From the NCBI GenBank assembly GCA_051294905.1, contig CM119384.1, forward strand, positions 6,324,001 through 6,388,000: a stretch of DNA of 64,000 nt. The letters are read 5' to 3'. The notes under the pieces are model-generated. The model had not been told where the DNA came from and did no database searches. It worked only from the letters and a program-made list of their open reading frames with translations. Source of the stretch: Botryllus schlosseri (lineage: Eukaryota). Below are positions 266 to 55,264 of the stretch, one piece after another. Each line of letters begins with the position of its first letter. The first letter of the stretch is position 1. Both the position numbers and the translations under genes were made by a program.

Positions 266-3200
266 CTATTCCACAATTAACTCCGGTGTATCCAGGTCCG
301 CACGTACACGTGTAGTCCTCTTCATCCACGGCAGTGCATCTTGCCGAGTTCAGGCACGGATTTGGATTGCATGGACTTTGATCTGATTCACAAAGAGTAG
401 AGGATAACCACACAGAGAATCACTGACTTGCCATAACTTACAGCAGTTAGAGACGCCGTTGCCGATAAGGCCTGGGTTGCACTGACATCGGAATGCGTTT
501 CGGTCTCGAACACAAGTGGCATCGTTGTGACACGGGCGTCCGTAGCGTTCTTCGCATTCATCGATTCCTAGGAAGATCATTTGAATTTTTTGTAACCGTT
601 CATATCAGTAGTGTAAGCTTCAATGATTAGCCGTTTCCAGAAGTTATAGCTCAAAATAAGATTTCTGAAACCCGAGATATGTAACATTCATGCACTTATA
701 TATTTCTCTTTTGATTACAAGTGTGTCTGCTGGCCAGCATAGGTGGTCGGTAACATAGTACTTCAACTTTTTTAAATACTCCATTAGGTTTTGCCTACTT
801 GCACTTGCACAACTTAACTACCAACCGTGACTACTTTGACCATCTCTGCTGGCTGGGTAGATGTCAGCTACTGATAGGATTACTCAAAATGGTCATGTCC
901 CACAAATCCATTAGCGTTCAATGCAAGGTCAAATTTATGACACCTACCAAGAGGCGGTTAAACTATGATTATATATATCACAAAGTGTAGAAGACTGCAA
1001 TGCGGCCTGGAATGTTTGCATTTTTTCAAAGGTAAAGCTTCTCCGGACAACTGCTTCAGTAATATTTTCAAGAATGTATCGCATACTTGTACAACTTCTT
1101 CTGCCGTTGCCCCTGTACCCTTCCTTGCATTGGCAGACTCGTCTGCCTTGGCTCATTCTGCATAGCGCATCGGGATGACAGGTGCTGCCATCTGGCAATT
1201 GGCAAGGGTCGTCCGCAACCGCTCCTGAAAACGATTCCAATGCTTTGCATGACTTTGTAACACGTAACTACCACAATACAATACAGTTGCTTTATACGAT
1301 GGTCAAATGTGTGGTGTGATGATGAATGATTTACCCAGTTCTTATTGCACAGAATTAATGTTCATCCAAACAACATTTTTCCATCAGATCTTTTATATCA
1401 ACTCTAGTCAGGAAGCATCGTGAACATAAACGATTTGTCCACGATCTTTGAATTACTCCACAGCTATTGTATGAACTATAATAATGGCTACCATAGCAAA
1501 TGAATAATATAATCATATTAAAATACACTCGAATATTTTCGGCCAGTACCAGCAGAGAATTCAAGATAACTTTATATATCAATAGTCTTATCACCAAATA
1601 TGACATCACCGGCATAAAAATTTCCGCCAACCTAACGTGTGCGAACACAAGGAATTTGTGTAAAATCCAAAAATAGTACGCTGAGCATAAGCCATCTGTT
1701 TTCCTCAATTAGCCGTTTTTTTATGCCGGTGACATCATATTTGGTGATACGTCTTTAATGTACTTTGCATATTGTACTAATAGCGGCTGAGGATTAACTC
1801 TAACGAGTGTCAGATAAAAATAGTCAGGTTTATTTCAATATAAATATATCATTCAATTGTACATTGAAGTTTCAGTACCTCCAAGAGCTTCTTCACATAA
1901 ATATTTAGGATACTTCTTGTCATTCGAAAATCTTTCACGAATACATGTTATAGAGATTAATATCTCATCATGTACTCTAGTTACAAACCATGAATCATCT
2001 CTCCTATATTACGTAAAGCATCTTACTGCAAGAAAATCCATTGCCGGTATATCCAGACATGCATTCGCATCGGAATCGACTGGCCACGCCCGTCTTGCAT
2101 TCAGCGTTGACGTCGCATGCTCGTCCGCTCGCCCTCTCGCATGGAGACATTTCTGTTAATGGGAGATCGAATCAGATTTAATGCTCCAGCTTCATTTAAA
2201 GGTCACAATACCTTCGCACGTAAAACCGTTTCCTTTGTATCCGGCTTTGCATCTACATCTGTATTCGGAGCTGGAGTCCATTTGACACTCTGCGTTCACG
2301 TCACAGAACTGTCCGAGATTCTCTTCGCACGGATCTGTCACTAAATAGAAGCAAAGGTTCTCAAAGTAGCCACTCCAGTTGAAGTAAAAGGAACTGCGTA
2401 AAGTTATACTCAATTACAAGTAGAAGTACAAAACGGTATCGCAAGAAATCAAATAAGTAGCTTCCAACATCAGATTTGGTTGAGTTATACAGGGGCTATT
2501 CACTTCTTTGTAAAAAGTCAGTAGTTTTGGCTAAATAGCTGCCCAAGTAGAAACGGAAATAGTCTAAAATTGTAAACTCATGAGTAGGTGGAGCAAGTAG
2601 GCAAAATCTACTGGGGTACTCCAATTAGGAGAAGTACTTCGTTACTGACAATCTGTGAAAATATGGCAATTCGACAATTGTTAAAAAATTCTATCAATTT
2701 GTAACAAAATCGCACAATAATATCAGGAACGAAATTATGTTCGTTAAGGCACATACATTATTCTTGTGATGCCTAGTTTTGAAAATTCGTCAGCATTGTG
2801 ACTTGACTCGATTTAGTTCGAGGTAACTCTGGTAATAACGTGAGACAAATACGATAATAAGGTATAATGAGAAGCACAATTACCTATCTGGCAGTTCCGG
2901 CCTCTGTATCCGGCCATGCAATTGCAAGTGTAACCTCGGGCATTAGCGGCTCCTTGGCACCTACCGCCGTTTTGACACGGGCTGCTCCTGCAAGCGTCTG
3001 TGTTGCAAAGTAATACAATGCATCAACATGTGGACAACGTCATTTTATGTGCATGATTTCGCAGGCAATATTAAGTACCTGTTTCGCAGTTTCTTCCGAT
3101 ATATCCAACTGGACATAGGCAGGAGTAGGTATCCCCAGATACTACGCAGTCTGCTGATCGTTGGCATGGGTTGGGAGTACATGGATTGCGAGCTGCAAAA

Positions 3201-4612
3201 TGAAAATTATGTCAATTTTAGATCTAGAAAACAGTCATAGTCATATTTCAATCGAAGTAAAATGATCTTTCAACAACAGTAGTACGTTTGATGACTTGTC
3301 AGTAGAATTCGCGGGTGTCTAAAAATTTACGACTGACTTTTCGAATAAGTTATAATAACGAGTACTGTGAAGTTCAGTAGCACCATAAACTTTTATTGGT
3401 GCGGCACTCTTCCTAACACAATAGTTAGGAAGAGTGGTAGCATCCTTAGCCTCCACGCATTCCACTTTGGATTTGGTAAGCAATCTTGTGTGCATAAAAA
3501 ACTCTAATTTTATAATGCAGAGAGGAACCATAGTGAATTTATTCTTCGGCCGTAAATTAGGAGAGTATTACTATATTCAGTGTTATCTTATTTTGTGAAA
3601 ATGCTTGGAAATTAAATCAATTTGTCTAGCTACCTATCTCAAATGCCACTTTTACTACATCAAACTTATACTACATCAAAATCTCATCACGGGCTGTGTA
3701 CTTTGCCTCAAGAGTATCCTCCGTGTCGATAGAATGAACCGAAATTCTTTTTTACTTACATCTGCATTCCGACACGGGTACGCAAGTGTTATCTGTACCG
3801 CTGCGTTCCACTGACCCTTCGGGACAGACACAGAAGCTATCTCGGTTGCAGCCTCTATTACATATGGGACGTCGGTTGTCGCAGTTGGCCGGGCAATTTG
3901 TCGCGCATGGATTGAACACTCGGTTTCCAGGGCAACGCGCTGCAAAGAAAAAGTAGTGCTATCCACAGTATTGAGTGGTAGAGCTTGTGGTTCTTGAACA
4001 CTAGAGCATTTTGAGTTGGGCAGAACGATTTGGAAAATTGTGAAATTATGAAAGTTTAGCATTGTACAATTGTTTGTGATTATTATGCAACCAAGAAAGT
4101 GGACCATGACTAGGAAAAATGTTAAGAACGGCTGGTTTGGATCTAATGTAGAAATATATTCGACTAAATTTTGCTCACAATAGCACCGGTTCTGCTTTGA
4201 AAATTTTTCATGCAACAAAGATCATTTGCATTATTGGCCTGGAACGAATATTTATGCAGGCATAAATTGCAAGATTTATGCAATCTCCAATTCATTTCAC
4301 TTTAATTCACAGCCATTTTTACCAAATAATATAAATTAACGAAATTTTTCAGCATTTCTGATATCTATTATCTAATTAAGTGTTGTAAACATCCAAAATT
4401 CAACCGTATAGAAAAATTTACAGTCCAACCAATCAACGGTATTAGTATGTTTAAACTTTAAGATCAATATCACCAGGTTGAAATAATGTACTTACGGACG
4501 TTCTGACAACGTTCACCGCTGATAGGTGCCTGACAGGTACATTTGTATCCGAGTGGGCCAGGCACATTTTCGCAAAATCCACCGTTCAGGCAAGGATTTC
4601 GTTGACAAGGAG
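266..4612 (-). CDS. Distal EGF/TIL exons (EGF, TIL, 7x EGF)
   Basis: Exons 4496-4612, 3760-3939 (TIL: [18 protein letters not shown]...), 3079-3192, 2884-2997, 2212-2334, 2027-2152, 1087-1224, 442-567, 266-382. All are phase 1-1. Confidence 0.88.
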
Positions 4613-40600: not shown

Positions 40601-43600
40601 GGCGCAGGCGTTTTACGTAAGAAGCGACCGGTGTCACAGCACTTCTATTATCACTTAGTATGACATCATAACAGTAGGAAGGATGCGTAAAGTTTAAATA
40701 TGCACCTTTTATGTCGCAAAGTATATAATACCAGCTCTAAACCACATAAAGGTAATTTGGTATTTTTTCGGCCAAACCTATTGCATTGCACTTTGTAACA
40801 ATTCTGTTGGTTGATCACGATTTCACAGATATATCATGTGCATAACATACGCTGCAATACGCCTAATCGGGGTTTCAAGGCATCGAGAGTGAACAATAGT
40901 ATCGAAACTACGATTGTCGTTGATAAAATAACTCTTACAGAGGTATGGAGCGTGTAATTTCAGTACTCGAAAAATCAACTCCCCACCATGCGACTCTACT
41001 CTATCGCACTACATCACTGTCTTCGTATTTTCAAGATATATGCCTGCATTCAATGGTGTTCATATTATCGAAAATCGATGCGATCAATGTTCAGTATCGA
41101 CGTTTTCAACAACCGTAAGTCATGGTAGTTTTGCAGGCTTCATACCAAATAGTATTTCCCTTCGAAGGTGCAACCGCACTGTGCCGCTCTTACGCAGCGA
41201 TCGCCAGACAGAACGTATCCCTCGTTGCATTCGCATCCTATCAAGAAAAAACACCGCGTGAGCTTGGCAAGCGATGTCGCGTTTTCGCGCACAGTTACGT
41301 CACAATACCTTCCACGCAGCCTTCGCCGCAAGTCGGGCTCGTGTTCACGCACGTCGCCGGACAGAGAGACGCGCAGCTAGAGTACTGCGAGTTAGGCGGG
41401 CACGTAAGAGCTGAAACATGAAGTTTGATTACTGGGATGCTGCAGAATATGGTTCTGGTTTAAATCAGTGCGTTTTAATTCAGGTTTTTACCCTTGATTT
41501 TTTATTTTAATTCCACCGCGCTAATTTTATTGATTTTTTGCTGCTGTTTTATTATCTGGAGAGATGCGTGAAGGTGATTTAGGACTGTCGTGTGCATTGT
41601 ACATAAACTGGACATTGTTTTTCGCATCCAGAGACCACTAAAGAGATCACTAATGATACCCATGATATAATAGTGTTAAGGATGATTCCGATTTGACTCA
41701 ATATTAGGGCTGATCGAAATCGAGTAGGCCTACCTGAGGCATTCGATTCTGAATCGAGTATTAGGCTTCAAATTCAGTACTCGAGTATCACACATTATTG
41801 ACAAATGACATCACAACTGTATAAATGACCTGGAAAATGCAAGCACGTACAATGTACAGGTACACTTTATGCGACCACAAATATAACGTCAGTTCTATAC
41901 CCTGGCTTGGACTCGGACTTGACTTTGTGGTGAATTGAAAATGACTCGACTTTAAGTGAAAACTGTAAAAGTGAGATTGATTTTAACTCGAAACCATGTG
42001 ACCTGGTTACAACCCTGCCCCGGATTCAACATGTCTCGGAACGGATTAATGGCGATTCTAGCGACAGATTATTGCCACTGAAGTTTAACATTTTCAACTA
42101 TGGGATTGGGAATAGTGATTCCCAGCCGCGCATTAATGAGTTGGTGCGATATGCTGCGTTACCTTGATTGACATGGTCGCCATTCATCCCATGTTCTTTT
42201 ATTGTTTTTATTGGGAATAAAAAAATCATGATTTGAATTATTGCTTTGATTAAAAGCGATTTTAATCAGAAGCAAAATGATATTTACCAGAACCCTACTG
42301 CAGAAGGTCCTAAAATGCAGAGGTGGTCAAAGTAGTCGTGGTTGGTGCTCATGTAGAAGGAACGTCGTCAATTTCTACTCAATCTCGCTACGATTTCCAG
42401 GCCTAGTTTTAAAGTAGACTTGGAAGTCAGGGATATCAAGATATAAAGTTCTAGATATCCCTGTTCGAAGTAATCAAACTGAATCATGACCGCTTCAGTA
42501 AGTAGGGTAAGTACCAAAGCCTACTGCATTACTTCGAAAAAAGTATAATTATTTCGTTGCTGACCACCTACGCTAGAACTACGAACGAAGCAATTGACTC
42601 ACGCGTTCGAGTGACGTCACGCCAAGGTTGGATGGTCGCACCGTCATCGTTACAAGCCTGCGCGTACGCGGCGACGGCTTGCTCCAGAGCGGATCTCGCG
42701 CCTTCGTAGACGCAAACGTCGAATAGGCAATCCTGTCGGGATTAGACAATATATCATTTATATGAGAGGTCGAATTCCAAATTGTAATATGTGCGGAAAC
42801 TCACGGCGAAGAAGCTGGCGGGCTTGACGCGCGCGTGGCAGCCTTTGAAGGGTCCGTTCGGGTTTCTGATGACAGCGCAGACGCGATTGTATCGTCGGGT
42901 GTTCGCGGGAGACGAGCATTCGCTGTCTTTCAAGTCTTCGGGCGATACGCACCTTCGGGATACGAAATATTTATGCGAGCGGACGTTGCACGATCATGCA
43001 CACTGCACAGCTATGTCGCAGGTGCAGCCCGCGAAATGGGTATGTAATAAAGCTAAGTCCGATACGTTTAAGCTATGATCAAATTGGTTCGAAGGGGCAG
43101 CAATACTCAAATCACATAAATCACATAAAATCGCATATGCTGACTCTGAACATTAATATTTATTCAATAATCCGAAAATTTTGCGCGCTTGGCTCGATTT
43201 TCCTGCGATAATTCGCGATTGTTATAGGTAGCGCCATATGGAATAAGTTTATTGATATTTATATATGGATGAGATGGTAGGCTTTGCAACTATTCTACAA
43301 AGCCCATATGCGGCCCGTGATTTCAATTGCGTATATCTGGTCCGTTCATAAAAAAAGATTGCGCACCCCTGTGTCACGTGACTACAGGATTGTGGTAGAG
43401 GCAACGCGCATTGTAACTTTATCGGACATATTTCTAAAAGCACAGTCCTTTTTACACGCGAATATCGAAGAGATAATTGCTATGTCGACTAAACAATCGG
43501 GACTTCATAAGAGACGCCTCGTCAATGTCATCCGAGATATCTACCCATCTATAGACATGGCTTCAATGAAAGGTGATCGATCACTGATCATTTCAGCATG

Positions 43601-46600
43601 ATGCAGAACGAAGCCTATCAGGCGCCTATAGACTATTTTCATTTCGGGCGATATTACGACTATCTAATTTTAATTCAGACATGGATTCACCATTGCAAGC
43701 TTTACCCTGTAGGCGAGGTTTCTACAAATATAAATTTATATTCAACTTACTCAGTCTTTGAGGGAGTTAGATATCTGTTTCCGTGAGCGTTGGCGTCCTC
43801 GACACCATCAACAACAATATCGTTTGCAGGGTTTCCGTCGAAATTTCCGCAAAGTCCTAAAAACAAGCCCACATTCACAAAATGTCATCTGTCGCCGGCA
43901 ACAATGACATGTATTTCAATATAAATAGCCTACTGCCCGGACTTACGAATTATGTAGCCTAGGCTACGAATTGACGCTTGAATCTATATTTAGTTGTACA
44001 CAATCATGACGTATACATTCTTTATGAACACACCTTCGAGCTGGTCGCCGAAGTATTCCGGCGGAACTGCGACTACTAACGAGTATCGCCCATCAACTTT
44101 GATTTGCAGTCGATTTGCAGCTTTCAAAACGGCGAATCGTCCTTGCCTTTCGATAGTGTATTTCGATGGTGATGAGTAAGGCAGATTCACTACTTCCCCG
44201 TTGATCTGACAACAACAACATTTCATAAAGCGGACACATAATTGTTTTCTTTCTATGAGCAATGAAAACTCGAGACTGTAGCATTGTAACGCCACAGTGG
44301 CGGGGTTGTCACAAGGTTCAGCGTTAGCAGAATGTAAGCCCGACATGATCCACTGGACCTCGATTAGTATTCGAACACGAAATTTCGCATGATCTTGGAT
44401 ATTCCTGTGAATTTACAGTCGCCATTGAATGTGGGCCCGACTGATTTCAGGAATTAGCATTGAAGGGGCTCGCATTAGGGTTAGGTGCGAGGCAGGGGAT
44501 TTCGCAATCGCGCGTCACGTGACTGAAATTTTCACGGGCCGCGTGCAAGCAATGACAGAGCCTCAAGGCGATTGGTACACAGCCAATCTGAAACAAGACG
44601 CGCGACAACAGAGATAAACTTGATGTAATCTGCGTTTGCACTAATATGCCTGGGTCAGCTGTTTGCAGATGCGACCCGATAACATCTAGATTCTAGATAA
44701 TTTGAGACGCGCCGCGACTCGGGAGTGTGCTGTACGTGTTCCGACTACGATTACATTCATGGCACAACGATGACTATACAAATACATTTTACCTACACAA
44801 GGCCATGCTAACTCGACCTTTTTGAATAGACCTTTGTATTGCTATCAGCGCATATCAGCCTATCGCATAAACCGGATTGACAGAAAACAAAGTTACATCA
44901 ATCGACGTATTAATGCGGTGCCAGGCCTCGAGGCTGGCCGCAGGTGAAAACGCAAATGTCGCTACTTGAGTCGGCGCGTTGGTCGCATGACGCAGATAAT
45001 TTGCTATTAATCTAAAATCCGTCACTGACATTTCGGTAACTCGCGAGAACAACACCGATCCCAATGTCGTATTAATTTCGCGCCTTTGACGGTAAATGGA
45101 TAATCTGTGCCGGCCCGAGATAACAAGTTTCCAGGACCAGGAATTGCCGGAGGCCGATTACGGTGTGAAATTAGCACATCTATCCGCCTTAACCGCTGCT
45201 AATTATTTTGTTTTTAAAACCGCCTAACAACCCGGCGCGTGACCGCATGTGCTGTTTGCAGCCGATTTTGTTACACATTGCGGCATTGTCTATTCGCTCT
45301 TGCGGTCGAGAAACCGCAGCTATTTTTTGGTAATTGTAGTTTTCGAGTGGATAATAAGACTCAGGGAACGCAAAATTAACATCTCGGCGTTCCACTTTGC
45401 ACCAAGCACAGAATAAAAGGATATTCGTTAATCTTTCGCCCGAAAATTTCGATAATGTGATTGGATTGGTCCAAAACATTTTAATAGGAGCTGTTGGTGT
45501 TATGTCGGAAAAATCACCCGATCCGTTACATAATTTTATGCCGCGCGTGTTATCCAGTGGTATGCTTCATCAGCGACCGAATATGCCCGCAATCTCCAAT
45601 ACAACATTTCAACGCGTCACACCCACTAAAAGTATGCGACCACCCGACCGAATCTACTTTTGGAAACCACTTACTTGAGTACCTTTCGACATGCGTAGGG
45701 AATCTCTAGCTCTACTTGTACTTGAGTTTAAAGTTACGTCGTTAGTTCAACGTCTACATGAATAGCTAGCTATACGCTGACTACCTTGACCACCTCTGTT
45801 AAGATCAGGAGACGGTATCGTATAGAGTGGGCTAGTAGTGCGTCGAACCCATTAAGGCCGCGATAGTGTCGTGGGTATGGGTATAGCCACCTAATGCGAT
45901 TACGAGGGATGAAAATAGTAGGCAATGAAGCACAGTTTTTCAGGCGGCGCTAAAATCCATTAATTATATAGTCACGTGTGTTGCATATCACGTTGAGCTC
46001 GACGTACCCGCCAAGTGAAAGAGCCATAGATGTATGCCTTTACATGGAGAGAGCTAATCAGTAACAGATCAAGCAAGAATATAATTGGGTCACTGTTGAT
46101 GTTGTTATTCGGATAACCAAGGTTTAGACGGGAGGGTCTATAAAACAGTGCCATCAAGGACGAGCCAATTCCCAATATCTACAGCTTAAAAACTGTGCTG
46201 AAAATGCTATAGTCAGTTCACGACAAAAACCCTACCCGCTCCTGCGAGCTGTGACGCAACCATTGAAAGCTGTTTTGACTACGACTCAGTATCGGGAAAG
46301 TGGGAAGCATGCTCCTGTACAGTAGGGGTATTCAAAAATGATTTTTTTTCTCAAATCGTACTGACTACTTGATAAAATTGTTAGGTTACCTAATTTCAGC
46401 CTACATACCAAATTTGGCTTAATTCCAGCCAGCAGCCGCATTGCTACAGGAGAAGAAAGTTTCGATTTATTATATAAAAATAAATAACAAAAAATTTGAA
46501 AGTTTTCTGTTCACTCCATGAAAGTGTTAGGTTGTGTACAGAAACGATGTTCACCAACCAGTGGAAGCGGAGTTTTTGCCGTCGAAAAATTTGGATTTGA

Positions 46601-49600
46601 ATAAAATAGTATTTACGGTGAGCACCACTATAATAAATAATTAAAGAATTGGTCACCGTAAATACTATTTTATTCATAATCCAAATTTTTCGACGGCAAT
46701 AACTCCGCTTCCACAGGTAGGAATTGAACTAAATATTTTGAACATTGTTTCTGTAGACAATCCAACACTTTCATGGGGTGAACAGAAAATTTTCTAATTT
46801 TTTGGTATTTATTATTATATAATAAATCGAAACTTTCTTCTCCTGTAGCAATGCGGCTACTGGCTGGAATTAAGCCAAATTTGGTGTCTAGGCTTAAATT
46901 AGGTAACCTAACAATTTTATCAAGTAGCCAGTACGATTTGAGAAAAAAGTCATTTTTGAATACCCCTACTGTACAGTGTACCTGTACGCCCAAGCGATCG
47001 CAGCTAAACAGCGTGGATGTAGTCGAAGATCACTTCTATAAAGACACACACGCATCTGCCTGGTGTACATTTCAAAGTAGATTCTCTGGTTCGCCCGACC
47101 GGCGAAACGGGCGATCAGAATTCAAATCGGGCCTTGCAGCGTGTTTTTGCTCCGAGCGACGTGAAACCACAGAGATGCGTCAACAACCATATTCGTATGC
47201 TCGTCACGTTCAACATACGCACATCTCATTGGTTGCAATAAGCGGGCGTGATCATTGTTGATAGACTAATTGGCAATGCCCAAGGACTACCGCGACAAGT
47301 ACAAGGTTGCGTTATACACGGCAACTCGTCACGAATACGCGATCAACATGTTAGGCCCCGCGGTAAATGAGTGATTCCGGCCTACACAATCGCTGATGGG
47401 TGCGTCTGTAATATTTTCAAAACACCACTTAGCGGTGTCTTACAAAAAGCCTAGAAGTGGGCCGTGCTATAAGTCGGCAGTTACGGAATAAAATGAAGAA
47501 TATCGGCCAGGTGTAAATGACCATAGTTGTCAACAAACAACATGAATACCTCAAACACACACACACCAGCAAATAAAATCGTTCGATTTAACGCGAATTT
47601 CTTTATACAGCGAGTCGCACAACGCACAATGCTCCGATGAGCTGTCCCAATAAGGCCCAATGTTCCACAATGACATTTGGAATACATTGGAAGGTGCCAA
47701 AAAGCCTATTTCTATCAGCTGTATACTTGATTCACGATTGCGACTTAATGCTGCAAAATCTGTGTCGCAAAGGAGACGACAGTCCATTTACGTTACTACG
47801 TAATGTTATTCGATTGCAGTGCATAGGTCTGCGTGGTACCTGATAGCTAATGAAGCATACCATCCTGAATCCGGCGATCAAATCCGACATTGTGACACCG
47901 CAATTGAACAGTTACGTATATCAGATGCCGATTAACCTTTGCAACAACATATTTTTCTGTGAATTTTTGTCAAACACCGCGTCTGATTTTTTGACGAATA
48001 GACGATGATATTTTGATATATGATTCATTTGCGGCCCTTTGTTACAGTAACGGCACCGCTTATTGTCGCGTCAGCTGGATGTAATCATTTTGTCGTTTTA
48101 CAGTGAAAACAATGCGTAAATACTAGGGCGGTTACTGCAATACCGCATTGACACTGGAACAAATCGCTCATCGCTAGCGGGATGAGCTTTGAATGTCGGT
48201 CGGCCACTAGTTTATAGTAACGATGTATCAGTAAACAGGCCTTCCAAACACCAAGAAAAGCTTCGATGACAATTAGGCCCTACCTTGATTTGAAGACCTG
48301 GATTCAGGTTTATAACGTCTCCGTACATCCTCACGACAGCTCTGCCAAGCCAGGAGACCGAAATCTTGCGTCCGCGATGTATGTTGAAAACCTGCGAATG
48401 CGGCGACAACGTTCAGGTTCGATATTTTTGTTTCTACGTCACTTGTCCGCAAGATTTACCTCGATGTCGAATTTCTCCTGTTCGCTTCCCGAATATCTCG
48501 CGAACGTGTACGAGCAATCGCCTTGGAAGTCGAACTTCTTCTGGTCGAACGTGGTGTAGTGGGGGTCGCCCACTCCTCTGCATCTTGTGAGCCCGGTCGG
48601 TCTCTTCACAGCGGGTTCTGCAGAGAGGGCAATTATATCATCAGAATTGCGTTCAAGGTGAGTACGCTCCAAGGGCGTCTGATTTGTACCATTTTGGGTG
48701 AATTTGTGAACAATACAAAACACAAATTTTCACCTCCGTCGGTACTACGAGATAGCGCTATGTTATCGCAGTCTATAATCTAGCTAGATGAATATATATT
48801 TCAGTGCGTTCGCTGAAGCATGATTTAGTATTCTGTTTCAATTCGACTATATCATCCGAGAAGAGATGGAACTCAGATCGCATTTAAAACAAACTTGTTT
48901 AAAACAAGGCCCTTGTTTAAAACATGTTTTTTCAAGCCATGGCATCACGAATATTCAATTGTGACGTCATATTGGATTGACATTGACTATTGAAAATATA
49001 GGGTAAATGTAGCTCCTTTGACGAATGTTGCTGTTGAACCGACTATTTTGAGGGTTCCAACCATGCCATATCGATATACGTTGGCTATATCGTGTGAGAA
49101 TTGTCCGTAGTCTCATAACACGTTTTTTGGAAAGTATTTACACAATTACGACATAATTTTGCAACTAAAAATAAACACAATTTTTTTTAAGGCCTTTGTT
49201 TAAAACACTGTTTAAAACATGTTTTAAACAAAGTGTTTTAAAACACCGTTTTTTTTATGCAACCCTAGATGGAACGCTAATATAAGTAGAAGTAACGCCA
49301 CAAATCTGTGCTCTACTCAATTACAAATAGAAGTAGCAATTTCTAATAGACATGAAAACTACTTGAAGGGAGAGTGAAAAATGAAAGATCTGAAAAGTAC
49401 TCGAGGAAGTAGTATCAAAATGTATATTTGATCGACGGGTCGCATATTTTAGCAGTTATTCAGATGTGGCTACAATCACAGTGTGCATTTTCGCGACTAC
49501 CGCAAAATGACTAAATGATACTACAAATAAATATCGAATCTTAGAAAATATAATCGGTTACCGTGATACAAGGGCTATTTCTCGCGGCTCTTGCCACAAT

Positions 49601-52600
49601 TTGACTCATAAAAACGACGCAAACTTATCTCAAAACTACTTTCTCCGTTTCAAAATCGAAACGTGAAAAGTACGTAGATTTGCCCACTAAAACCTGTGCG
49701 AGTAGAAGCGGATGCAGTCTAAAACATAACCACTTGAGTAAGTATTGCAAGCACGCAATATATACTTACGTATTACCAAACGAAAACCGACTTCAGTTCT
49801 CCCAAATTTCGGGTTGATGAAATAACGACATAATCGGAGAAGGGAAGTGTGCTCATGCGGCCAATCTACCTGTTTTGACGCAAGTCGGTGGGGTCGACTC
49901 CCAGCCTCCGCTTCCGCAGTTCATCACCGCTTTTCCAACCAGATTGAAGCCGTTTGCGCAGCGAAAGGTCACTCTTTGTCCGGCGAGAAATCGTGGCTTG
50001 GGAGGTGTCCTGCGTCCGTTGGGAATGTTACCCGTAAACGAGCACGTTGTTCTCACCGCTGAAACACGTTGCGGGACGTGATAAGCCGCGTGTGGTGCAT
50101 GTTGCGTACGTTGACAAAACGTTAGGTGAATAGATGCGGTAGAGTTGGTGGTAAATCCATTTCGCAGTGGTTAGAAAGATTGACATCGGTCAGTGCATAG
50201 ACGCGGCGCATACAATTACATTGACAGTTGACGTTATAGTGCGGGCTCGTTTAGAGATATTGAAGAACAGAGGTGAACAGACAATTTAGTGATATTCAGA
50301 GGTCATTCGAATCGATCATAATTGGCTGAATTTGTGTTCATAAATTTATGAACGACGCCGTGCAAAAGCCGGTTCGAAAACCCCATTTTCATCCCGAGCC
50401 TCGAACGAAATGGCAGATCAAGACCGTTTTTTGAAGTATTATGCCCTATTGAAGAGCGGATTTGCACAAAAACTACACAAACGGAAGTGAAGGAAAGTAT
50501 CACATTATACTGCGACTCACAGGAGATTCAACCCATCGATGCGATATACTGGCTCCTTCGTCGCTGTGGAATCAATGTAGCTTATGTCCAAATTCTTAGA
50601 AAATCAAGTATAATTTTCATTTTATTCGGCCATTTCTTTGTAATGATTGTGATTGTCACATTGTTTCGAAGTTAGCCACGATCAAGATATGGCCGAAAGA
50701 AAATAAAAACTTAATTCTCTCAAAATGAGTAAAATGGACTTAAGCTACCCTGATTCCACGGCGACGATAAGGTCATGCTGTAGCCAAGACGGAGAAACCA
50801 AGAGACGCAGAGATTTGTCACTGATAAAATTTCGCCACGATTACGTCGTGACGACATAAATACGTTGTCGCGTGTATATCGAATGTTTCACAAGAGGCAA
50901 CGGCCCCTCCCAACGATATTGACTTAGTCTATGCTGGCCATTACTTTCTACTGCCACCGTATAGCCAACATCCTTACCACGTCTGATACACAGTGGCGGG
51001 TTGTTCGTCCAGGCGCGCGCAAGCGAGCACCGTGTGGTTCTGCGTCCCCGCAAAAGAAAGCCGTTTTCGCATCTGAACGAAACGAGGTCGCCGGGAACAA
51101 AGCCTTGCTTCTTTTGAGACGCTATCGCACCGTTGACGGGGGGAGTCAAATCCGGACATCCAGCTGTCGAACAAGCACACAATGTCGTCAGACTCGTTCG
51201 TTATTCGCAAGTTATGTGGGTACTGAGATTATTTTTTATGTTGTCGCTTGAATGCGGGAGTTACCACCCTCTTTTACACCGTGGTACCCGTTTAAAATAT
51301 ATAAAAATCAATTACTCTATTTTTCAACCTTTCGAAAAAGTAAGAAACATCATTTTCATTGAAAAATGGTCTGTGCAGTTATAGTGGAGTAGATTTATGG
51401 ATGATAAGTTTGATGACTTTCTTGGAAGAGTTCCAGATTGAGAAACTCTTCTTTAAAAGTACATATTTTACCTTTTCACGTCACACATTCTGATATGACG
51501 TCATATTATGGGATACTGGACTCAACGCCCAGTAATCTAAATTTTCCCAGCATCCTCACCTGGCGCTGCTGCTCTCGGGCAGCAATACCTGACCTTGAAA
51601 TCAGGGCAACGCCTTCTCCTTTGCTGATCTCGGTTGAGGCAGGATAAGCCGAACGTTCGGCCGACCCTTACTGCGTAGCCCGACGTGTGGTAAGACTCGT
51701 CTGTGTCAGCAACGCGAAACTGCGACCGAGAAAAGATTTAGGGCGTCCGCCGATTTAAACTCATATTTCTGAGGCCTACTTCAACTCCGAATGGGTCTTC
51801 GCATGTTTGTCGCGTTCTCCTGTGCTTGACACGAGTTTCTACGTCGCCGGGACCCCGGTTGGGTTTGTCCACGTTGACCCAATCGCCCCAGGCATTGTCG
51901 GGACAGCCTCCGATGGTGCTGCGACCTGTAGTCGTGTAAACGAAACGTGGAACATGTGAAGAGAATTCATATGAATCGATATAGAACGCCGCGATGTGCA
52001 TACGTTACAGCTCGTTGAGATAATGTGATATTAATCGAGATAATATGCCTAAAACGCGTATCCAATACAAAGTCCCGCGACAGACCGCGTCCAACACGTA
52101 TCAAACCGCCAGGAATCGCAACATTCATGTACAAAGGGCATGGATTCGTATTTGGATTCGATATTAACGAATTAGACCAGATTCGAAATGCATCCACGAT
52201 TTCGTTGGTAAAGAAATCCGATTTCGATATGACACTTCCAATCGATTTGTATTCTAGTGCGGATTCATTATTATTATCAATATCGTGGGAAAAGTGGCGC
52301 TTTCAACCGATTATGTTGTTCGCGCCACCACGCGCAGAATAGTTTACAATAAACGACAAAAAAAAACGAATTATATCCTATATCTGACGAAACAGTATCA
52401 GTTTATTAATATTTTCATCATTTCAAAACACCACAAAACTTCGATACAATGAAAAGATAGGAAGGTGTACGCATGAGAGTATGAATTCTATAGTTTGGAT
52501 GGTCAAACGATGGAGGGTCAAAAGAGTTTCTAAAGAGAAAGCAGCTTTTTCATTTACACAGTTCTCAAAACAAAAAGCGGGGGTGATACTCGCGGGAGTT

Positions 52601-53248
52601 CAGAACGTAACTGAACCATGGACGGACAAAATTTTTGATTCGGACATGACAGGACGCGAGTATTTTGACATGCAACTATCAAATTGGTTTATCGTGAATA
52701 TCCAGGAACGACAAGCATGATAAGTGGCTATTCACCTGGCGGTTCGCATCGGTACCGGATGTAAGCGTATTTCTCGATAGCCGGACACGCGTTGCCCATC
52801 ACTCTCGTGTTAACGCCTAGCTCGCACGAGTTTTCGTTTTGACAAGCGGCTGTTATGACCCTCAGCGACGGGACGGACCGGCAAGGCGACTTGGGAACCC
52901 GAACTGTCGGACAACTGAAATAAAAACACCACGGTTTATTCACTCGAACTTCTGGCTATCATGGTCTGCATTTACAATTCGGCATCCGGCATCCGGCCGT
53001 AATACGCATCTTCAACGTATATCACATGACTAGGATCGGCACACTGCACAGACAGCGTGGATCCGTCACAGGACGCACTGAAACGGGTAACTGCAAATAT
53101 TGAAATAATGTTATCTGAGGTCGAAGTCCTAATTACGGGCGATCTGTTACTCACTGGTTGTGAACTGCTGCGCGACACCGACTGCCACCAGCAAAAAGTC
53201 AAAAAATAAAGAAAGCATTCTCCTCTTTGTAAGAGAAGCTGCCCCCAT
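266..53248 (-). CDS. Giant secreted multidomain extracellular protein (FCGBP/zonadhesin-like VWD-C8-TIL core plus SUEL lectin, WxxW, CCP, 49 EGF, 4 thyroglobulin-1 modules); 83 coding exons, 3' end unresolved
   Basis: 83 GT(GC)-AG bounded exons read on the minus strand. Intron phases match at every junction and I found no in-frame stop. Domain motifs were recognised by Cys spacing and signature residues. Exon coordinates are given in the sub-features below. Confidence 0.9.
1589..1749. repeat. 32-bp inverted repeat (30/32 match) around a spacer of about 97 nt; probable small MITE remnant
   Basis: TATCACCAAATATGACATCACCGGCATAAAAA (1589-1620) versus its near reverse complement at 1718-1749. Confidence 0.7.
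4976..7586 (-). CDS. Thyroglobulin-1 x2, EGF, TIL, EGF (C-terminal module copy 2)
   Basis: Exons 7386-7586 (201 nt, paralogue of 13637-13837), 6285-6545, 5464-5601, 5198-5380 (183 nt, paralogue of 11382-11564), 4976-5092. Confidence 0.88.
5774..5895 (-). pseudogene. Decayed EGF pseudo-exon
   Basis: The minus strand reads [15 protein letters not shown], like [17 protein letters not shown] of exon 11672-11785 but with two stops. It lies where module copy 1 has an extra EGF exon. The 5' half is barely alignable. Confidence 0.55.
6920..7262 (-). mobile_element. tRNA-derived SINE (tRNA-Asp-like head) with a LINE-like 3' tail
   Basis: A-box-like TTGCGTGGTGG and B-box GGTTCGATTTCC. The 3' part (GCCGAGGTGGATGC...GCATCCTCCCTATCTGTTCATTACATCGCA) aligns with the tail of the LINE at 34590-34728. 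Confidence 0.75.
8558..9668. mobile_element. hAT MITE, middle element
   Basis: TIRs CAGGGGTGGGCAAACT / AGTTTGCCCACCCCTG; perfect TSD GTATAAGA; GCGGCCCGC subterminal repeats. Confidence 0.92.
8736..9050. mobile_element. hAT MITE, inner element
   Basis: TIRs CAGTGGTTCTCAAACT / AGTTTGAGAATCACTG; TSD TTCTAAGA / ATCTAAGG (6/8). Same family as 60927-61216, in inverted orientation. Confidence 0.85.
10792..14735 (-). CDS. P/T/K linker exon, then Thyroglobulin-1 x2, EGF x2, TIL, EGF (C-terminal module copy 1)
   Basis: Exons 14661-14735 ([24 protein letters not shown]), 13637-13837 and 12959-13213 (QC...CY/WCV thyroglobulin motif), 12041-12154, 11672-11785, 11382-11564 (TIL, GC donor), 10792-10905. 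Confidence 0.87.
12177..12313 (-). mobile_element. Short 3'-tail fragment of the LINE family with a (CTGATA)n tail
   Basis: Homologous to 34590-34728; GGTGTC-29nt-GACACC stem. Confidence 0.8.
15335..24556 (-). CDS. EGF array block A: 18 single-EGF exons, tandem paralogue of block B
   Basis: Exons 24380-24556, 24130-24261, 23573-23707, 22838-22957, 22634-22768, 21763-21897, 21118-21273, 20657-20791, 18792-18929, 18614-18733, 18197-18331, 18003-18137, 17457-17615, 16668-16802, 16466-16606, 15731-15853, 15530-15667, 15335-15469. Lengths are identical to block B exon for exon. Confidence 0.92.
18978..20368. mobile_element. Non-autonomous hAT element with an extra internal right TIR
   Basis: Ends CAATGTTCCCT / AGGGAACATTG; perfect TSD ATCACAGG. 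A second GAGGGAACATTG ends at 19158. Confidence 0.88.
23079..23525. mobile_element. hAT-type MITE (older)
   Basis: Ends CAGTGTTTCTTAAAC / GTTTAAGAACCGCTG; TCGTACCCC subterminal repeats; TSD not cleanly preserved. Confidence 0.7.
24727..30847 (-). CDS. EGF array block B: 18 single-EGF exons (EGF_3-type, C-x7-C-x5-C spacing)
   Basis: Exons 30671-30847, 29871-30002, 29350-29484, 28802-28921, 28608-28742, 28339-28473, 27938-28093, 27311-27445, 26864-27001, 26678-26797, 26407-26541, 26212-26346, 25975-26133, 25639-25773, 25438-25578, 25125-25247, 24924-25061, 24727-24861. All are phase 1-1 with 6 Cys and a GY/F-x-G-x-G-x2-C ending. Confidence 0.92.
30913..32117 (-). CDS. TIL domain followed by a low-Cys, about 100-aa SEA-like module, 3 exons
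   Basis: Exon 31932-32117 is a TIL ([20 protein letters not shown]...CVCPQG). Exons 31472-31673 and 30913-31019 join in phase (2) to give [27 protein letters not shown]...[23 protein letters not shown]...EPTTC. The SEA identity is tentative. Confidence 0.72.
32516..39901 (-). CDS. VWD2 (GDPH replaced by GGSQH) - C8 - TIL - short Cys-rich module, 7 exons
   Basis: Exons 39642-39901, 38995-39150, 38075-38247, 34211-34352, 33502-33665, 33322-33443, 32516-32626. Motifs: [13 protein letters not shown]...[34 protein letters not shown]...[34 protein letters not shown]. Confidence 0.87.
32861..32985 (-). mobile_element. LINE 3'-tail fragment
   Basis: TTTTCATCATTTCAAAACACCACAAAACTGCGATACAATGAAAAGAT block and the stem are shared with 12177-12313. 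Confidence 0.78.
34729..36298. mobile_element. Non-autonomous hAT (Charlie-like) element
   Basis: TIRs CAGTGGTTCCCAACC / GGTTGGGAACCACTG; perfect 8-bp TSD GCCTAGGC (34721-34728, 36299-36306). Confidence 0.92.
35313..35889. mobile_element. hAT MITE rich in GACTCGAGTC palindromic subterminal motifs, nested in the previous element
   Basis: Ends CAGGGCTGCAACC / GGTCAACCCTG; TSD TTATATAT / CTATATAT (7/8). Confidence 0.85.
36413..37429 (-). CDS. C-terminal part of LINE ORF2 (reverse transcriptase, CR1/L2/Crack group), 5'-truncated
   Basis: [37 protein letters not shown] and GPDVWNSIP motifs; open for 338 codons to the stop. Confidence 0.93.
   Translation of the reverse strand: MKSYLTGRQQMVAISDTLSSPHPVTCGVPQGSVLGPVLFTLYVNDIFETSSLNTTLFADDTHLLSSASSTAELDALTGDQMPKVHEWTAQNNLCINASKSQLLTVNSKNSLTVNIAGQPVSNTDNAKYLGVLLDSNMSWKSHIQSLETKLSPKCGLFYSLGRFMPAWVLLILFKSLIQSKLHYGILCWGAASKTALKPLQKLQHKVLRIIARAPKGPGCPSNKSLLKRFGVLNIEDMRKLEIAKFMYQFHCGRCPEYFNDFFTSESKAHKYNTRASTSSKYHMIDRKDHRSIKYAGPDVWNSIPPAIRQSTSMSTFKSKYKQLLLNKYSPSSRLPDHD
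39250..39430. mobile_element. Fragment of the GACTCGAGTC hAT MITE family (one terminus)
   Basis: Ends ...GACTTGGTTACAACCCTG, the reverse complement of the left end of 35313-35889; repeated GACTC motifs. Confidence 0.7.
40430..48617 (-). CDS. VWD1 (with GDPH) - C8 - TIL - TILa unit, 9 exons
   Basis: Exons 48460-48617, 48284-48391, 44034-44205, 43751-43856, 42805-42952, 42603-42732, 41309-41410, 41146-41237, 40430-40571. Motifs: [85 protein letters not shown]. Confidence 0.9.
41905..42017. mobile_element. Fragment of the GACTCGAGTC hAT MITE family
   Basis: GACTCGGAC/GACTCGAC motifs ending GACCTGGTTACAACCCTG. Confidence 0.65.
46320..46971. mobile_element. Fold-back (palindromic) Tc1/mariner-pogo-type MITE
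   Basis: About 300-bp inverted arms (46320-46621, 46653-46971) around a 31-nt loop; termini CAGTAGGGGTATTCAAAAA; TA on both sides. Confidence 0.9.
47431..47566 (+). mobile_element. 3' half of SINE family 2
   Basis: GCGGTGTCTTACAAAAAGCCTAG...GGTGTAAATGACCAT...CATGAATACC followed by (CA)n. Confidence 0.72.
48873..49265. mobile_element. AT-rich MITE family (TGTTTTAAAAC repeats), copy 1, inverted relative to copies 2 and 3
   Basis: Shares its internal ...GGTTCCAACCA...GTTGAACCGA... segment and GGGTTGCAT-like ends with 56995-57500 and 59011-59384. Confidence 0.75.
49870..51163 (-). CDS. Two Sushi/CCP domains, one exon each
   Basis: Exon 50978-51163 ([10 protein letters not shown]...[13 protein letters not shown]...[14 protein letters not shown]) and exon 49870-50058 ([10 protein letters not shown]...[13 protein letters not shown]...[13 protein letters not shown]). 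Both are phase 1-1. Confidence 0.9.
51560..51925 (-). CDS. Mucin2_WxxW (CysD-like) domain, 2 exons
   Basis: Exons 51780-51925 and 51560-51719 (60-nt intron) give [20 protein letters not shown]...[13 protein letters not shown]...[24 protein letters not shown]. Confidence 0.88.
52393..52468 (-). mobile_element. LINE 3'-tail fragment (76 bp)
   Basis: Same block as 12177-12313, truncated within the stem. Confidence 0.72.
52736..53090 (-). CDS. SUEL/rhamnose-galactose-binding lectin (Gal_lectin) domain, 2 exons
   Basis: Exons 52976-53090 and 52736-52914 give [38 protein letters not shown]...[46 protein letters not shown], with the YGR motif and the 8-Cys SUEL pattern. Confidence 0.88.
53155..53248 (-). 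CDS. First coding exon: signal peptide [26 protein letters not shown]|QQFTT
   Basis: ATG in atcATGG context, basic n-region (KRR), hydrophobic core, GVA|QQ cleavage-like site. The GTGAGT donor is phase 1, matching the next exon. A second in-frame ATG lies at 53218. Confidence 0.75.
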
Positions 53249-54966: not shown

Positions 54967-55190
54967 CCCTCAAACTGATTTTTCTCCTTTTCCAAGACAT
55001 ACCGCCTATCGCGTCACAATATCGAGTCTTGTAATACATAGATTCGAATATATGCGAGGCAGAAAATGCTGTAGCATAATCAGCCTGACCAAATGATCCG
55101 AGTCACAAATCTCACTGACTAGGTTAGATAAGCCATAAGAAGATAATCTCTATTCGTATAACATTCATCACAACCTTCACCGTTTGTATA

Positions 55191-55193
<3 letters not shown>

Positions 55194-55260
<67 letters not shown>
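55194..55260. repeat. (GT)n microsatellite, about 33 units
   Basis: Pure GT run seen directly. Confidence 0.97.

Positions 55261-55264
<4 letters not shown>

What the first reader, a model, noticed from the sequence alone, without database searches (positions are those of the whole stretch)
266..53248. A secreted 'lectin-VWD-EGF rod-thyropin' giant of about 4,000 aa: candidate bioadhesive or mucus-net fibre precursor
Seen: 83 in-phase exons encoding SP-SUEL-WxxW-2xCCP-2x(VWD-C8-TIL)-TIL-SEA-like-36xEGF-2x(Thy-Thy-EGF-TIL)-EGFs. There is no long PTS mucin tract and no transmembrane segment within the window. Established: the sea-star footprint protein Sfp1 combines VWD/C8/TIL with galactose-binding lectin and EGF domains; mussel mfp-2 is a tandem-EGF plaque protein; flatworm (Macrostomum) adhesives use EGF- or VWD/TIL-containing proteins; Ciona endostyle expresses vWF-like secretory proteins; TIL and thyroglobulin-1 modules can inhibit serine and cysteine proteases. 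Inference: I do not recognise this exact combination. It would give a sugar-binding head, a disulfide-polymerising core, a long stiff rod and a protease-resistant tail, as expected for a structural secretion (glue, feeding net, tunic or egg coat).
Basis: partly seen in the sequence, partly recalled or inferred. Interest (0 to 1): 0.82.

Follow-up and report, generated by a model that had tools for sequence, protein, structure and literature searches.

The report
Giant lectin–VWD–EGF matrix protein gene
The window holds the first ~4,000 residues of a real, transcribed sea-squirt gene for a giant extracellular protein (mucin-type head, 36-EGF rod, thyroglobulin/TIL/EGF modules). The gene runs on beyond the window, and no data here support a glue or feeding-net role.

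Summary
They give one 3,963-aa open frame with no stop.

Per-exon Pfam scans confirm the order: signal peptide, SUEL, WxxW, 2 Sushi, two VWD-C8-TIL assemblies, TIL, an unassigned ~100-aa module, 36 EGF_3, then Thy-1/EGF/TIL units and more EGFs.

RNA contigs from three runs confirm every intron between 28.6 and 34.4 kb. Single contigs bridge the mucin-type head and the EGF rod. They corrected one exon pair of my model.

The two 18-EGF blocks are an old duplication under purifying selection.

Corrections to the reading:
- The gene is open at its 3' end, so the "tail" is probably mid-protein and membrane anchorage is unknown. Other readers of this scan noted EGF exon arrays continuing to the left.
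- "SEA-like" is not supported.
- The lectin lacks the DPC motif.
- There are only two D assemblies.

New points are a GDPH motif in VWD1, strong sequon depletion, and a cationic rod with an acidic hinge every sixth EGF.

I found no orthologue of the head. It is a new variant of the tunicate multi-VWD mosaic proteins.

The parts
53155..53248 (-). Exon 1: start codon and signal peptide (basic n-region, 14-residue hydrophobic core, AQQ)
   Evidence: Read directly from the sequence. It is the only Kyte-Doolittle window above 1.6 in the protein. Donor is GTGAGT, phase 1. No RNA was laid here.
52736..53090 (-). Exons 2-3: SUEL / rhamnose-binding-lectin-type domain
   Evidence: Pfam SUEL_Lectin 6e-10 on exon 3. 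Best solved relatives are L-rhamnose-binding lectins, CSL2/3 and latrophilin RBL. YGR is kept; DPC reads NAC and KYL reads KYA.
51560..51925 (-). Exons 4-5: Mucin2_WxxW (CysD) domain
   Evidence: Pfam 1.9e-4 (profile positions 1-40) and 4.1e-8 (positions 46-88) on the two exons.
49870..51163 (-). Exons 6-7: two Sushi/CCP domains
   Evidence: Pfam Sushi 5.6e-10 and 2.7e-10.
40430..48617 (-). Exons 8-16: D assembly 1 = VWD (with GDPH) - C8 - TIL - TILa/E
   Evidence: Pfam VWD 5e-10 and 1e-3, C8 5e-4 and 1e-9, TIL 2e-5, TILa 2e-6. Exon 9 (48284-48391) was found by eye and by frame. GDPH is at residue 384. The 4.1-kb intron 9 was not tested with RNA.
32516..39901 (-). Exons 17-23: D assembly 2 = VWD (with CGVC) - C8-like - TIL - E-like
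   Evidence: Pfam VWD 1.6e-10 and 7e-5; TIL 4e-3 and 1.5e-3 on the split halves. The C8 exon has no Pfam hit. The best solved match is FCGBP, 6e-30. The exon 19-20 join and joints 20-24 are shown by RNA contigs.
31932..32117 (-). Exon 24: stand-alone TIL domain
   Evidence: Pfam TIL 2e-8, full length. Joints on both sides appear in RNA contigs.
30913..31673 (-). Exons 25-26: unassigned ~100-aa module 'X' with one Cys at each end
   Evidence: No Pfam, PDB-sequence or Atlas match. Exon borders are fixed by RNA joints. It is 43% identical to a module in the related contig L001. The AF2 model of the first exon is beta-alpha-beta-beta, pLDDT 79, with no significant fold match.
24727..30853 (-). Exons 27-44: EGF block A (18 EGF_3-type domains, one per exon; exon 27 begins with a P/T linker)
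   Evidence: Pfam EGF_3. Six Cys in each. Joints for exons 27-31 are in RNA contigs.
15335..24556 (-). Exons 45-62: EGF block B, the old duplicate of block A in the same order
   Evidence: Exon-by-exon 55-86% aa identity to block A; dS 1.15; dN/dS 0.14; introns unalignable apart from short flanks. Mean identity is 0.76 at offset 18 and about 0.50 at offsets 6, 12, 24 and 30, against about 0.42 elsewhere.
10792..13837 (-). Exons 63-68: Thy-1, Thy-1, EGF, EGF, TIL (inferred GC donor), EGF
   Evidence: Pfam Thyroglobulin_1 9e-12 and 3e-16; EGF 1e-8. The TIL exon borders were set by homology to exon 72 and L001, which keeps all 10 Cys.
2884..7586 (-). Exons 69-77: Thy-1, Thy-1 + Pro/Thr linker, EGF, TIL, EGF, EGF, TIL, EGF, EGF
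   Evidence: Pfam hits on seven of the nine exons: Thyroglobulin_1 on exon 70, EGF 2e-8 to 2e-7 on exons 71, 73, 74 and 76, and TIL 2.5e-8 and 1e-8 on exons 72 and 75. Exon 69 was assigned by its match to the Thy-1 exon of L001. Exon 77 was assigned by eye and was not scanned. Collinear with L001 at 54-74% aa identity.
266..2340 (-). Exons 78-82: four EGF_3 domains and one EGF; last donor GT after 266 in phase 1, no stop
   Evidence: Pfam EGF_3 5e-10 to 3.5e-8; EGF 7e-10. The frame is open at the window's edge.

Best explanation
This is the 5' part (82 exons, 3,963 aa) of one transcribed sea-squirt gene for a giant extracellular structural glycoprotein of the mosaic mucin/FCGBP-and-EGF kind.

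Shown: a signal-peptide exon; a head of SUEL-type lectin, CysD/WxxW and two Sushi domains; two FCGBP-like VWD-C8-TIL assemblies; an extra TIL; a conserved unassigned module; a 36-EGF array built as 6 x 3 x 2; then Thy-1/EGF/TIL units. Head and rod sit in one RNA contig.

Inferred:
- The head mediates assembly and cross-linking. The possible routes are non-covalent CysD and D-assembly contacts, a possible Asp-Pro autocleavage at GDPH in VWD1, a CGVC motif in VWD2, and perhaps glycan binding.
- The EGF array is a roughly 100-nm, non-calcium-binding spacer. It has almost no N-glycan sites and is strongly cationic (net +72), with an acidic long-linker EGF every sixth module. That pattern could drive staggered side-by-side packing or binding of polyanionic glycans.
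- The Thy-1 and TIL modules are more likely structural or binding modules than dedicated protease inhibitors.

Whether the mature protein is free, shed or membrane/ZP-anchored is not known, because the gene runs off the window.
For: One open frame over 82 exons with consensus splice sites. Pfam identities of the exons. RNA contigs in X6, X16 and X18 give every joint from exon 20 to exon 31. Single contigs of 803-1,183 nt bridge TIL, X and EGF 27-29 at even depth, and a loose end joins exon 19 to exon 20. The same RNA runs (X10, X16, X17, X18, X20) hold both the head and the 266-6600 stretch. VWD2 is closest to FCGBP among solved structures. GDPH and CGVC are present. GDPH autocleavage is established for VWD domains (PMC10880436 abstract). 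The two EGF blocks have dS 1.15 and dN/dS 0.14, so both are kept by selection. The 6/18 periodicity and length pattern are. Charge, aromatic content and sequon counts are: 3 sequons seen against 25.4 +/- 4.6 in block shuffles, and none in the 1,650-aa rod. The tail order is conserved at 54-74% identity in another species' contig. Tunicates are known to carry many multi-VWD proteins (17 in Ciona; PMC4948705).
Against: No orthologue or annotated relative of the head was found, so function rests on domain analogy. The C-terminus is unseen. There are only two D assemblies, and no D'D3 or cystine knot, which are the elements shown to polymerise mucins and VWF. The SUEL domain lacks DPC. Only 6 kb of the gene was checked against RNA, and the rod-to-Thy junction and the first exons are in silico only. 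The sequon deficit is partly expected, because many Asn sit in fixed GNG and NAxC contexts. A 2026 bulk RNA run gave no exon reads, so expression is restricted and its site is unknown.
Confidence: 0.6

Rival explanations
1. It is the ectodomain of a membrane-anchored or ZP/GPI-anchored giant, such as an adhesion GPCR, a Dumpy/tectorin-like apical-matrix protein or a zonadhesin-like protein. The anchor would be encoded beyond the left edge of the window. The lectin-VWD head would then be a distal ligand-binding tip on an EGF stalk, not a free fibre.
For: The frame is open at 266. Other readers' notes place EGF exon arrays immediately left of the window and a 31-EGF exon 36 kb on (unchecked). 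The SUEL domain's solved relatives include latrophilin RBL domains. A follow-up on this genome reports lectin-headed EGF-stalk adhesion GPCR genes, and others report EGF-ZP grafts (unchecked). From my own knowledge, zonadhesin and alpha-tectorin show that VWD-C8-TIL proteins can be anchored.
Against: No anchor has been seen. From my own knowledge, multi-D-assembly proteins with a CysD are mostly secreted. Nothing ties the downstream EGF arrays to this transcript yet.
Confidence: 0.3
2. One reading: it is the precursor of a particular secreted material (larval or stolon glue, endostyle feeding-net filament, tunic or egg-coat fibre) and works like sea-star Sfp1.
For: The domain vocabulary is shared with cohesive adhesive proteins. 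These include vWD-C8-TIL plus lectin domains in Sfp1/Sfp2, flatworm ap1 and a limpet protein, and EGF arrays in Sfp3/4 and mfp-2 (PMC9382459; PMC12817120). Sfp1 is autocatalytically cut into subunits, and VWD1 here has GDPH. The rod is cationic, aromatic-rich and sequon-poor. Expression appears sample-restricted.
Against: No tissue, stage or proteome evidence exists. Known Ciona adhesive proteins (ASP1, AAP1, APAP1/2) are small, 47-65 kDa. This genome holds many giant mosaic EGF genes, so the architecture alone does not point to glue or net. There is no discoidin domain and the domain order differs from Sfp1.
Confidence: 0.15
3. Two or more adjacent genes were merged by in-phase exons: a VWD gene, an EGF gene and a Thy-1 gene.
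For: 63 of the 82 exon lengths are multiples of three, nearly all phase 1-1, so frames would stay open across any false join.
Against: Single RNA contigs cross the head-to-rod boundary through exons with unusual phases (1-2, 2-1). No start or signal-peptide exon and no terminal exon is seen in the 1.5-kb intron before the Thy part. The same RNA runs hold both ends.
Confidence: 0.05

Closest known systems
FCGBP and gel-forming mucins / VWF (VWD-C8-TIL 'D assembly' proteins)
   Same: Two complete VWD-C8-TIL(-E) assemblies. A CysD (Mucin2_WxxW). GDPH in one VWD and a CGxC motif in the other. The VWD2 exon's best solved match is FCGBP, followed by MUC5AC, MUC5B, VWF and MUC2.
   Different: Only two assemblies, against 12-13 in FCGBP and D1-D2-D'D3 in mucins and VWF. 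No PTS region. No cystine knot seen. The head carries SUEL and Sushi domains, and the assemblies are followed by 36 EGFs and Thy-1 modules.
[quoted passage not shown]
   Same: A giant (3,853-aa) cysteine-rich mosaic with vWD/C8/TIL, glycan-binding lectin and EGF-type domains, cut autocatalytically into subunits (PMC9382459; PMC12817120).
   Different: Domain order differs. No discoidin domain was found in any scanned exon. Sfp1 has no 36-EGF array or Thy-1 modules in the descriptions I read. Sequence relatedness could not be tested, and there is no expression evidence here.
Nidogen-2
   Same: EGF_3-type EGFs combined with tandem Thyroglobulin type-1 repeats. Fish nidogen-2 proteins were among the better hits to the Thy-1 exon, behind Thy-1-only 'thyroglobulin-like' proteins, and the only hits that also covered most of the EGF rod.
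   Different: NIDO, G2F and LDL-receptor YWTD domains are absent from the window. Nidogen has no VWD, SUEL or WxxW.
[quoted passage not shown]
   Same: A predicted extracellular matrix glycoprotein that combines a VWD domain with a run of EGF domains (PMC7390686).
   Different: VWDE is far smaller and has a single VWD. The published OrthoFinder analysis found no orthologue in Ciona intestinalis. Orthology was not tested here.
Hemichordate and crinoid 'mucin-2-like' WxxW + Thy-1 proteins (XP_070580638.1, XP_033107983.1)
   Same: Large deuterostome proteins that combine a CysD/WxxW with many Thy-1 repeats and VWC/TIL-like cysteine modules.
   Different: They have no VWD, SUEL or EGF_3 array. They share only module types and are not collinear with this protein.

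Membership tests
Gel-forming mucin / VWF | N-terminal D1-D2-D'D3 (three VWD assemblies) | tested here: not met
   Only two VWD domains are found in the 3,963 aa (motif scan).
Gel-forming mucin / VWF | Long Pro/Thr/Ser-rich O-glycosylated (PTS) region, or VWA domains in VWF | tested here: not met
   The only S/T/P-rich stretches are about 15-25 aa, at residues ~1299 and ~3400-3430. No VWA hit in any scanned exon.
Gel-forming mucin / VWF | C-terminal cystine-knot dimerisation domain | not testable with these tools
   The gene runs off the window at 266 and the C-terminus is unseen.
FCGBP | Long tandem array of VWD-C8-TIL units, most with GDPH | tested here: not met
   Two units, with GDPH in the first only. 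FCGBP is nonetheless the nearest solved sequence.
Sfp1-like cohesive adhesive proteins | vWD-C8-TIL together with lectin and EGF modules in one giant chain | tested here: met
   Composition only; the order differs.
Sfp1-like cohesive adhesive proteins | Made in adhesive gland cells and present in the secreted glue | not testable with these tools
   Run metadata are coded and no proteome is available. RNA is present in several runs and absent from one bulk run.
Sfp1-like cohesive adhesive proteins | Sequence homology to Sfp1 | not tested
Rhamnose-binding (SUEL-type) lectin | SUEL fold with the YGR, DPC and KYL motifs of sugar-binding members (motif list from my own knowledge) | tested here: inconclusive
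   Pfam SUEL_Lectin 6e-10. YGR is present. The alignment to 5h4s shows NAC for DPC and KYA for KYL.
SEA domain (module X) | Match to the SEA profile or fold; GSVVV-type cleavage site | tested here: inconclusive
   No Pfam hit on either exon and no PDB-sequence or Atlas hit. The half-domain model is beta-alpha-beta-beta, which fits an alpha/beta sandwich, but Foldseek gave nothing below E 0.04 and no SEA entry in the top 50. There is no GSVVV. The spliced whole module could not be submitted by reference.
Nidogen | NIDO and G2F domains plus a YWTD propeller | tested here: not met
   Absent from all exons scanned; present in the nidogen-2 hits.
Thyropin (Thy-1 protease inhibitors) | Thyroglobulin type-1 domain | tested here: met
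   Four Thy-1 exons. Solved relatives include saxiphilin, the p41 fragment and a 'two thyropin protein'.
Thyropin (Thy-1 protease inhibitors) | Inhibition of cysteine or other proteases | not testable with these tools
   Needs an enzyme assay. From my own knowledge, many Thy-1 domains (nidogen, IGFBP, EpCAM) are not inhibitors.
Calcium-binding EGF rod (fibrillin/Notch type) | D/N-x-D/N-E/Q-C consensus before the first Cys | tested here: not met
   No D.[DN]EC motif anywhere. Only exon 81 has a weak EGF_CA hit, 3.5e-4.

The most novel reading that the evidence does not exclude
The rod has almost no N-glycan sites, is polycationic, and carries an acidic hinge every sixth EGF. In the most novel reading it is a self-assembly code. 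Molecules would stack in register by charge, and the FCGBP-type head would lock them, possibly through GDPH cleavage chemistry, into the filaments of a tunicate-specific secreted material such as the endostyle filter net or a holdfast cement. From my own knowledge, the protein makeup of that net is not known. The conserved module X would be a new extracellular domain family.
Probability: 0.12. Interest if true: 0.75.

Novelty: new variant of a known kind. Interest (0 to 1): 0.4.

Why it matters
Tunicates carry an expanded set of multi-VWD proteins whose roles are almost all unknown. The proteins of their feeding net, tunic matrix and adult cement are poorly defined. This gene is a well-supported, expressed candidate with three testable features: GDPH cleavage, a periodic charge pattern in the rod, and a conserved unassigned module. 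As it stands it is one more giant mosaic matrix gene in a genome that has many. Its interest depends on where it is expressed and how it ends.

Tried and rejected
1. My first automatic model added three upstream exons (62416, 60025, 54070), an 18-bp exon at 37198-37215, a retained intron in 22634-22957 and over-long starts for three exons. I removed these by inspection, by paralogue comparison and by RNA.
2. My exon 26/27 border (30872 / 30803) was wrong. RNA joints give 30913 and 30853.
3. The exhaustive HMMER search with Thy-1 exon 70 found no self-hit and no orthologue, only multi-Thy-1 proteins. None of the 150 listed hits matched any part of the model upstream of the EGF rod in a local BLAST.
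4. Word-indexed protein searches with module X exon 25 and VWD2 exon 17 found no candidates. Thy-1 exon 69 found only the L001 ORF.
5. Exact look-ups of four window ORFs, meant to reach contigs that extend past the left edge, found nothing on record.
6. Module X gave no hit in Pfam, PDB sequences, the ESM Atlas or Foldseek on a half-domain model.
7. Rfam found nothing in the window.
8. Ten further ORFs, upstream of the gene and inside introns, gave no significant Pfam family.
9. Endostyle and gut-barrier papers gave no matching protein. Ci-GFM1 is a different, VWF-like gene.
10. I did not submit spliced multi-exon protein sequences to any tool, because they have no reference. No whole-protein architecture search or whole-module fold was therefore run.
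Full report
**What is there.** The window is AT-rich animal DNA (GC about 0.38-0.46). Its minus strand is packed with short cysteine-rich open frames. A splice-aware dynamic programme over all AG...GT open segments chained 83 pieces. After correction the model has 82 exons and 11,890 nt of coding sequence. That is 3,963 aa with no stop. It runs from an ATG at 53248 to a GT donor after position 266, which leaves the codon in phase 1.

Exon 1 (53155-53248) reads as a signal peptide: a basic n-region, a 14-residue hydrophobic core, then AQQ. It is the only stretch of the protein hydrophobic enough for a membrane span. Median exon length is 135 nt and median intron length 363 nt. The lengths of 63 exons are multiples of three, nearly all in phase 1-1.

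**Domain identities.** Spliced proteins have no reference in this tool set, so I scanned exons one at a time. The matches are therefore to half or whole domains. Pfam gives:
- SUEL_Lectin, 6e-10.
- Mucin2_WxxW on two consecutive exons, covering profile positions 1-40 and 46-88.
- Two Sushi domains.
- VWD on exons 8, 10, 17 and 19.
- C8 on exons 12 and 13.
- TIL on exons 14, 21/22, 24, 72 and 75.
- TILa on exon 16.
- EGF_3 on the two rod exons scanned (27 and 38) and on exons 78-81.
- EGF/hEGF on the Notch-like EGFs of the distal part.
- Thyroglobulin_1 on exons 63 and 64, and on exon 70 through the HMMER search.

Exon 69 (Thy-1) and exon 67 (TIL) were assigned by their matches to the L001 contig, not by a Pfam scan.

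The order is: SP - SUEL - WxxW - Sushi x2 - [VWD-C8-TIL-TILa] - [VWD-C8-like-TIL-E-like] - TIL - X - 36 EGF - [Thy-Thy-EGF-EGF-TIL-EGF] - [Thy-Thy-PT linker-EGF-TIL-EGF-EGF-TIL-EGF-EGF] - EGF_3 x4 - EGF. There is no PTS tract; the richest stretches are about 15-25 aa.

**RNA evidence.** Many RNA-type runs of the same species label hold 13-22% of the sampled words of the head stretch. That stretch is about 26% exon. Five of these runs also hold the 266-6600 stretch.

Contigs of X6, X16 and X18 show a CT..AC (minus-strand GT..AG) joint at every predicted intron. They agree with my borders for exons 20-25 and 28-31. Exons 26 and 27 are the exception: RNA sets them at 30913-31019 and 30671-30853. 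This adds a Pro/Thr-rich linker in front of the first EGF.

Single contigs of 803, 1,122 and 1,183 nt run from TIL exon 24, or further upstream, through X into EGF exons 27-29 at even depth. A loose end at 34353 is the reverse complement of the end of exon 19. Exon 19 therefore joins exon 20 directly across a 3.7-kb intron that holds a reverse-transcriptase ORF. Head and rod are thus one transcript.

A 2026 bulk RNA run (about 13 million reads sampled) put no read on any exon, so expression is not ubiquitous. The contigs differ from the window by roughly 2-9% per exon, so they come from diverged haplotypes or a sibling lineage.

**The rod.** All 36 modules have six cysteines and the consensus C-x-r-x-x-g-R-r-C-x-x-n-A-x-C ... 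C[13 protein letters not shown]. Their lengths repeat as (52-61, 44-45, 45, 40, 45, 45) six times. Mean identity is 0.76 at offset 18, about 0.50 at offsets 6, 12, 24 and 30, and about 0.42 elsewhere. This confirms the 6 x 3 x 2 hierarchy that another reader noted (s1-268396).

The two 18-module blocks are 55-86% identical in protein. They have saturated synonymous sites (dS 1.15), dN/dS of 0.14 and unalignable introns. This is an old duplication with both copies under purifying selection, not an assembly artefact.

The rod is strongly basic (170 Arg, 77 Lys, 175 Asp+Glu; net +72; pI about 10) and aromatic-rich (11.5% Tyr+Phe+Trp). The long module that opens each six-module unit carries an acidic linker. 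In four of the six units it has a net negative charge (-3 to -6), and in the other two it is +2 or +3. No module has the calcium-binding consensus.

The whole protein has three N-x-S/T sequons, against 25.4 +/- 4.6 (minimum 10) in 2,000 shuffles within 45-residue blocks. The rod has none. Part of this deficit is expected, because many Asn sit in fixed GNG and NA-x-C contexts.

**The head.**
- VWD1 starts with GDPH, the motif at which many VWD domains cut themselves between Asp and Pro (PMC10880436). VWD2 lacks it but has CGVC before the end of the domain.
- Among solved structures the VWD2 exon is closest to FCGBP (6e-30), then MUC5AC, MUC5B, VWF and MUC2.
- The SUEL exon is closest to fish rhamnose-binding lectins and to latrophilin RBL domains. 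The alignment shows NAC and KYA where those lectins have DPC and KYL, while YGR is kept. Sugar binding is therefore possible but not assured.

**Module X.** Exons 25-26 (about 100 aa, one Cys near each end) match nothing in Pfam, PDB sequences or the ESM Atlas. The module is nevertheless real.

A 5.6-kb contig from another sequencing project (L001, Logan SRR23343704) carries, in order: Thy - EGF - TIL - X (two exons) - EGF - EGF - Thy - Thy + PT linker - EGF - TIL - EGF. It came to light through a 70-aa ORF that matched Thy-1 exon 70. It is 54-74% identical to window exons 64-73 and collinear with them, except that X follows the distal TIL there. The window has no trace of X at that place. The two X modules are 43% identical, with the hydrophobic pattern conserved.

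An AlphaFold model of the first X exon (2-row alignment, pLDDT 79) is beta-alpha-beta-beta. This fits half of an alpha/beta sandwich such as SEA. Foldseek found nothing below E 0.04 and no SEA entry in the top 50. "SEA-like" is therefore untested rather than supported.

**Relatives.** The exhaustive HMMER search with Thy-1 exon 70 returned fish "thyroglobulin-like" proteins, nidogen-2, and hemichordate and crinoid "mucin-2-like" proteins. The last group combines WxxW with many Thy-1 repeats but has no VWD. None of the 150 listed hits aligned to the head in a local BLAST. Word-indexed searches with head exons found nothing. I could therefore not show an orthologue of the whole architecture, nor exclude one, because only exon-sized queries could be sent.

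The literature gives context:
- Ciona has 17 multi-VWD proteins (PMC4948705).
- Ci-GFM1 is a different, VWF-like gene (PMC6109156).
- VWDE has no detected Ciona orthologue (PMC7390686).
- Cohesive adhesive proteins of sea stars, flatworms, urchins and limpets share vWD-C8-TIL with lectin and EGF modules, and Sfp1 is cut autocatalytically (PMC9382459).
- Known Ciona adhesive proteins are small (PMC12817120).

**What it most likely is.** It is a giant extracellular scaffold protein. Its head can associate and cross-link in the manner of FCGBP and mucin D assemblies and CysD domains. Its 36-EGF array is a long, sparsely glycosylated, cationic spacer with periodic acidic hinges. I put this at 0.6.

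The gene is open at 266. Other readers of this scan report EGF exon arrays directly left of the window and a 31-EGF exon 36 kb further on (s1-270963, s1-270922; not checked). The "thyropin tail" is therefore probably mid-protein, and a membrane, ZP or GPCR anchor cannot be excluded (0.3). The glue or feeding-net reading is one plausible special case without any direct evidence (0.15). A false merger of neighbouring genes is unlikely (0.05).

**Verdict.** The functional reading is only partly supported. It is a new variant within the tunicate multi-VWD mosaic proteins, of moderate interest until its 3' end and its site of expression are known.

Noticed in passing
window 36413-37429 (-): A 338-aa ORF with a reverse-transcriptase domain (RVT_1, 1.9e-15) lies inside the 3.7-kb intron between exons 19 and 20. 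It is a retroelement remnant on the gene's own strand and is spliced out in RNA.
   Followed up: partly
window 53773-54714 (+): A 313-aa ORF with an integrase core domain (rve, 7.6e-11) lies about 0.5 kb upstream of the gene's start codon. It is a retrotransposon fragment next to the presumed promoter.
   Followed up: no
window 32868-33061: This intronic stretch has contig word depth of 630-16,400 in three RNA-type runs, against about 60-160 on the exons. Raw reads there have many unlike continuations and poly(A) ends. It looks like a highly expressed dispersed repeat. There is no Rfam match.
   Followed up: partly
window 31122-31315: A second intronic stretch shows raised depth (about 175-225) in X6 and X18 but not in X16. 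It is probably another repeat.
   Followed up: no
window 11380-11381 (donor of exon 67): Keeping the tenth cysteine of the TIL domain, as in paralogous exon 72 (same 183-nt length) and in L001, requires a GC-AG intron (CAG|GCAAGT). The nearest GT donor would cut the domain short. This was not checked with RNA.
   Followed up: partly
window 55139-55302: A (TG)n microsatellite of about 80 nt lies upstream of the gene.
   Followed up: no
window 28600-34400, RNA contigs of X6/X16/X18: Exon sequences in the RNA contigs differ from the window by about 2-9%, with two haplotype-like variants in some exons. Either the species is very polymorphic or the RNA comes from a sibling lineage filed under the same label.
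   Followed up: no
L001:2081-2970 (Logan SRR23343704 contig): In the related species the unassigned module X sits after the distal TIL, between the two Thy-Thy units. In the window it sits only at the head-rod junction. TIL-X looks like a mobile two-module cassette.
   Followed up: partly
window 44206-48283: The intron inside VWD1 is 4.1 kb, the longest in the gene. It has several long non-coding ORFs without Pfam matches and is probably transposon-derived filler.
   Followed up: partly
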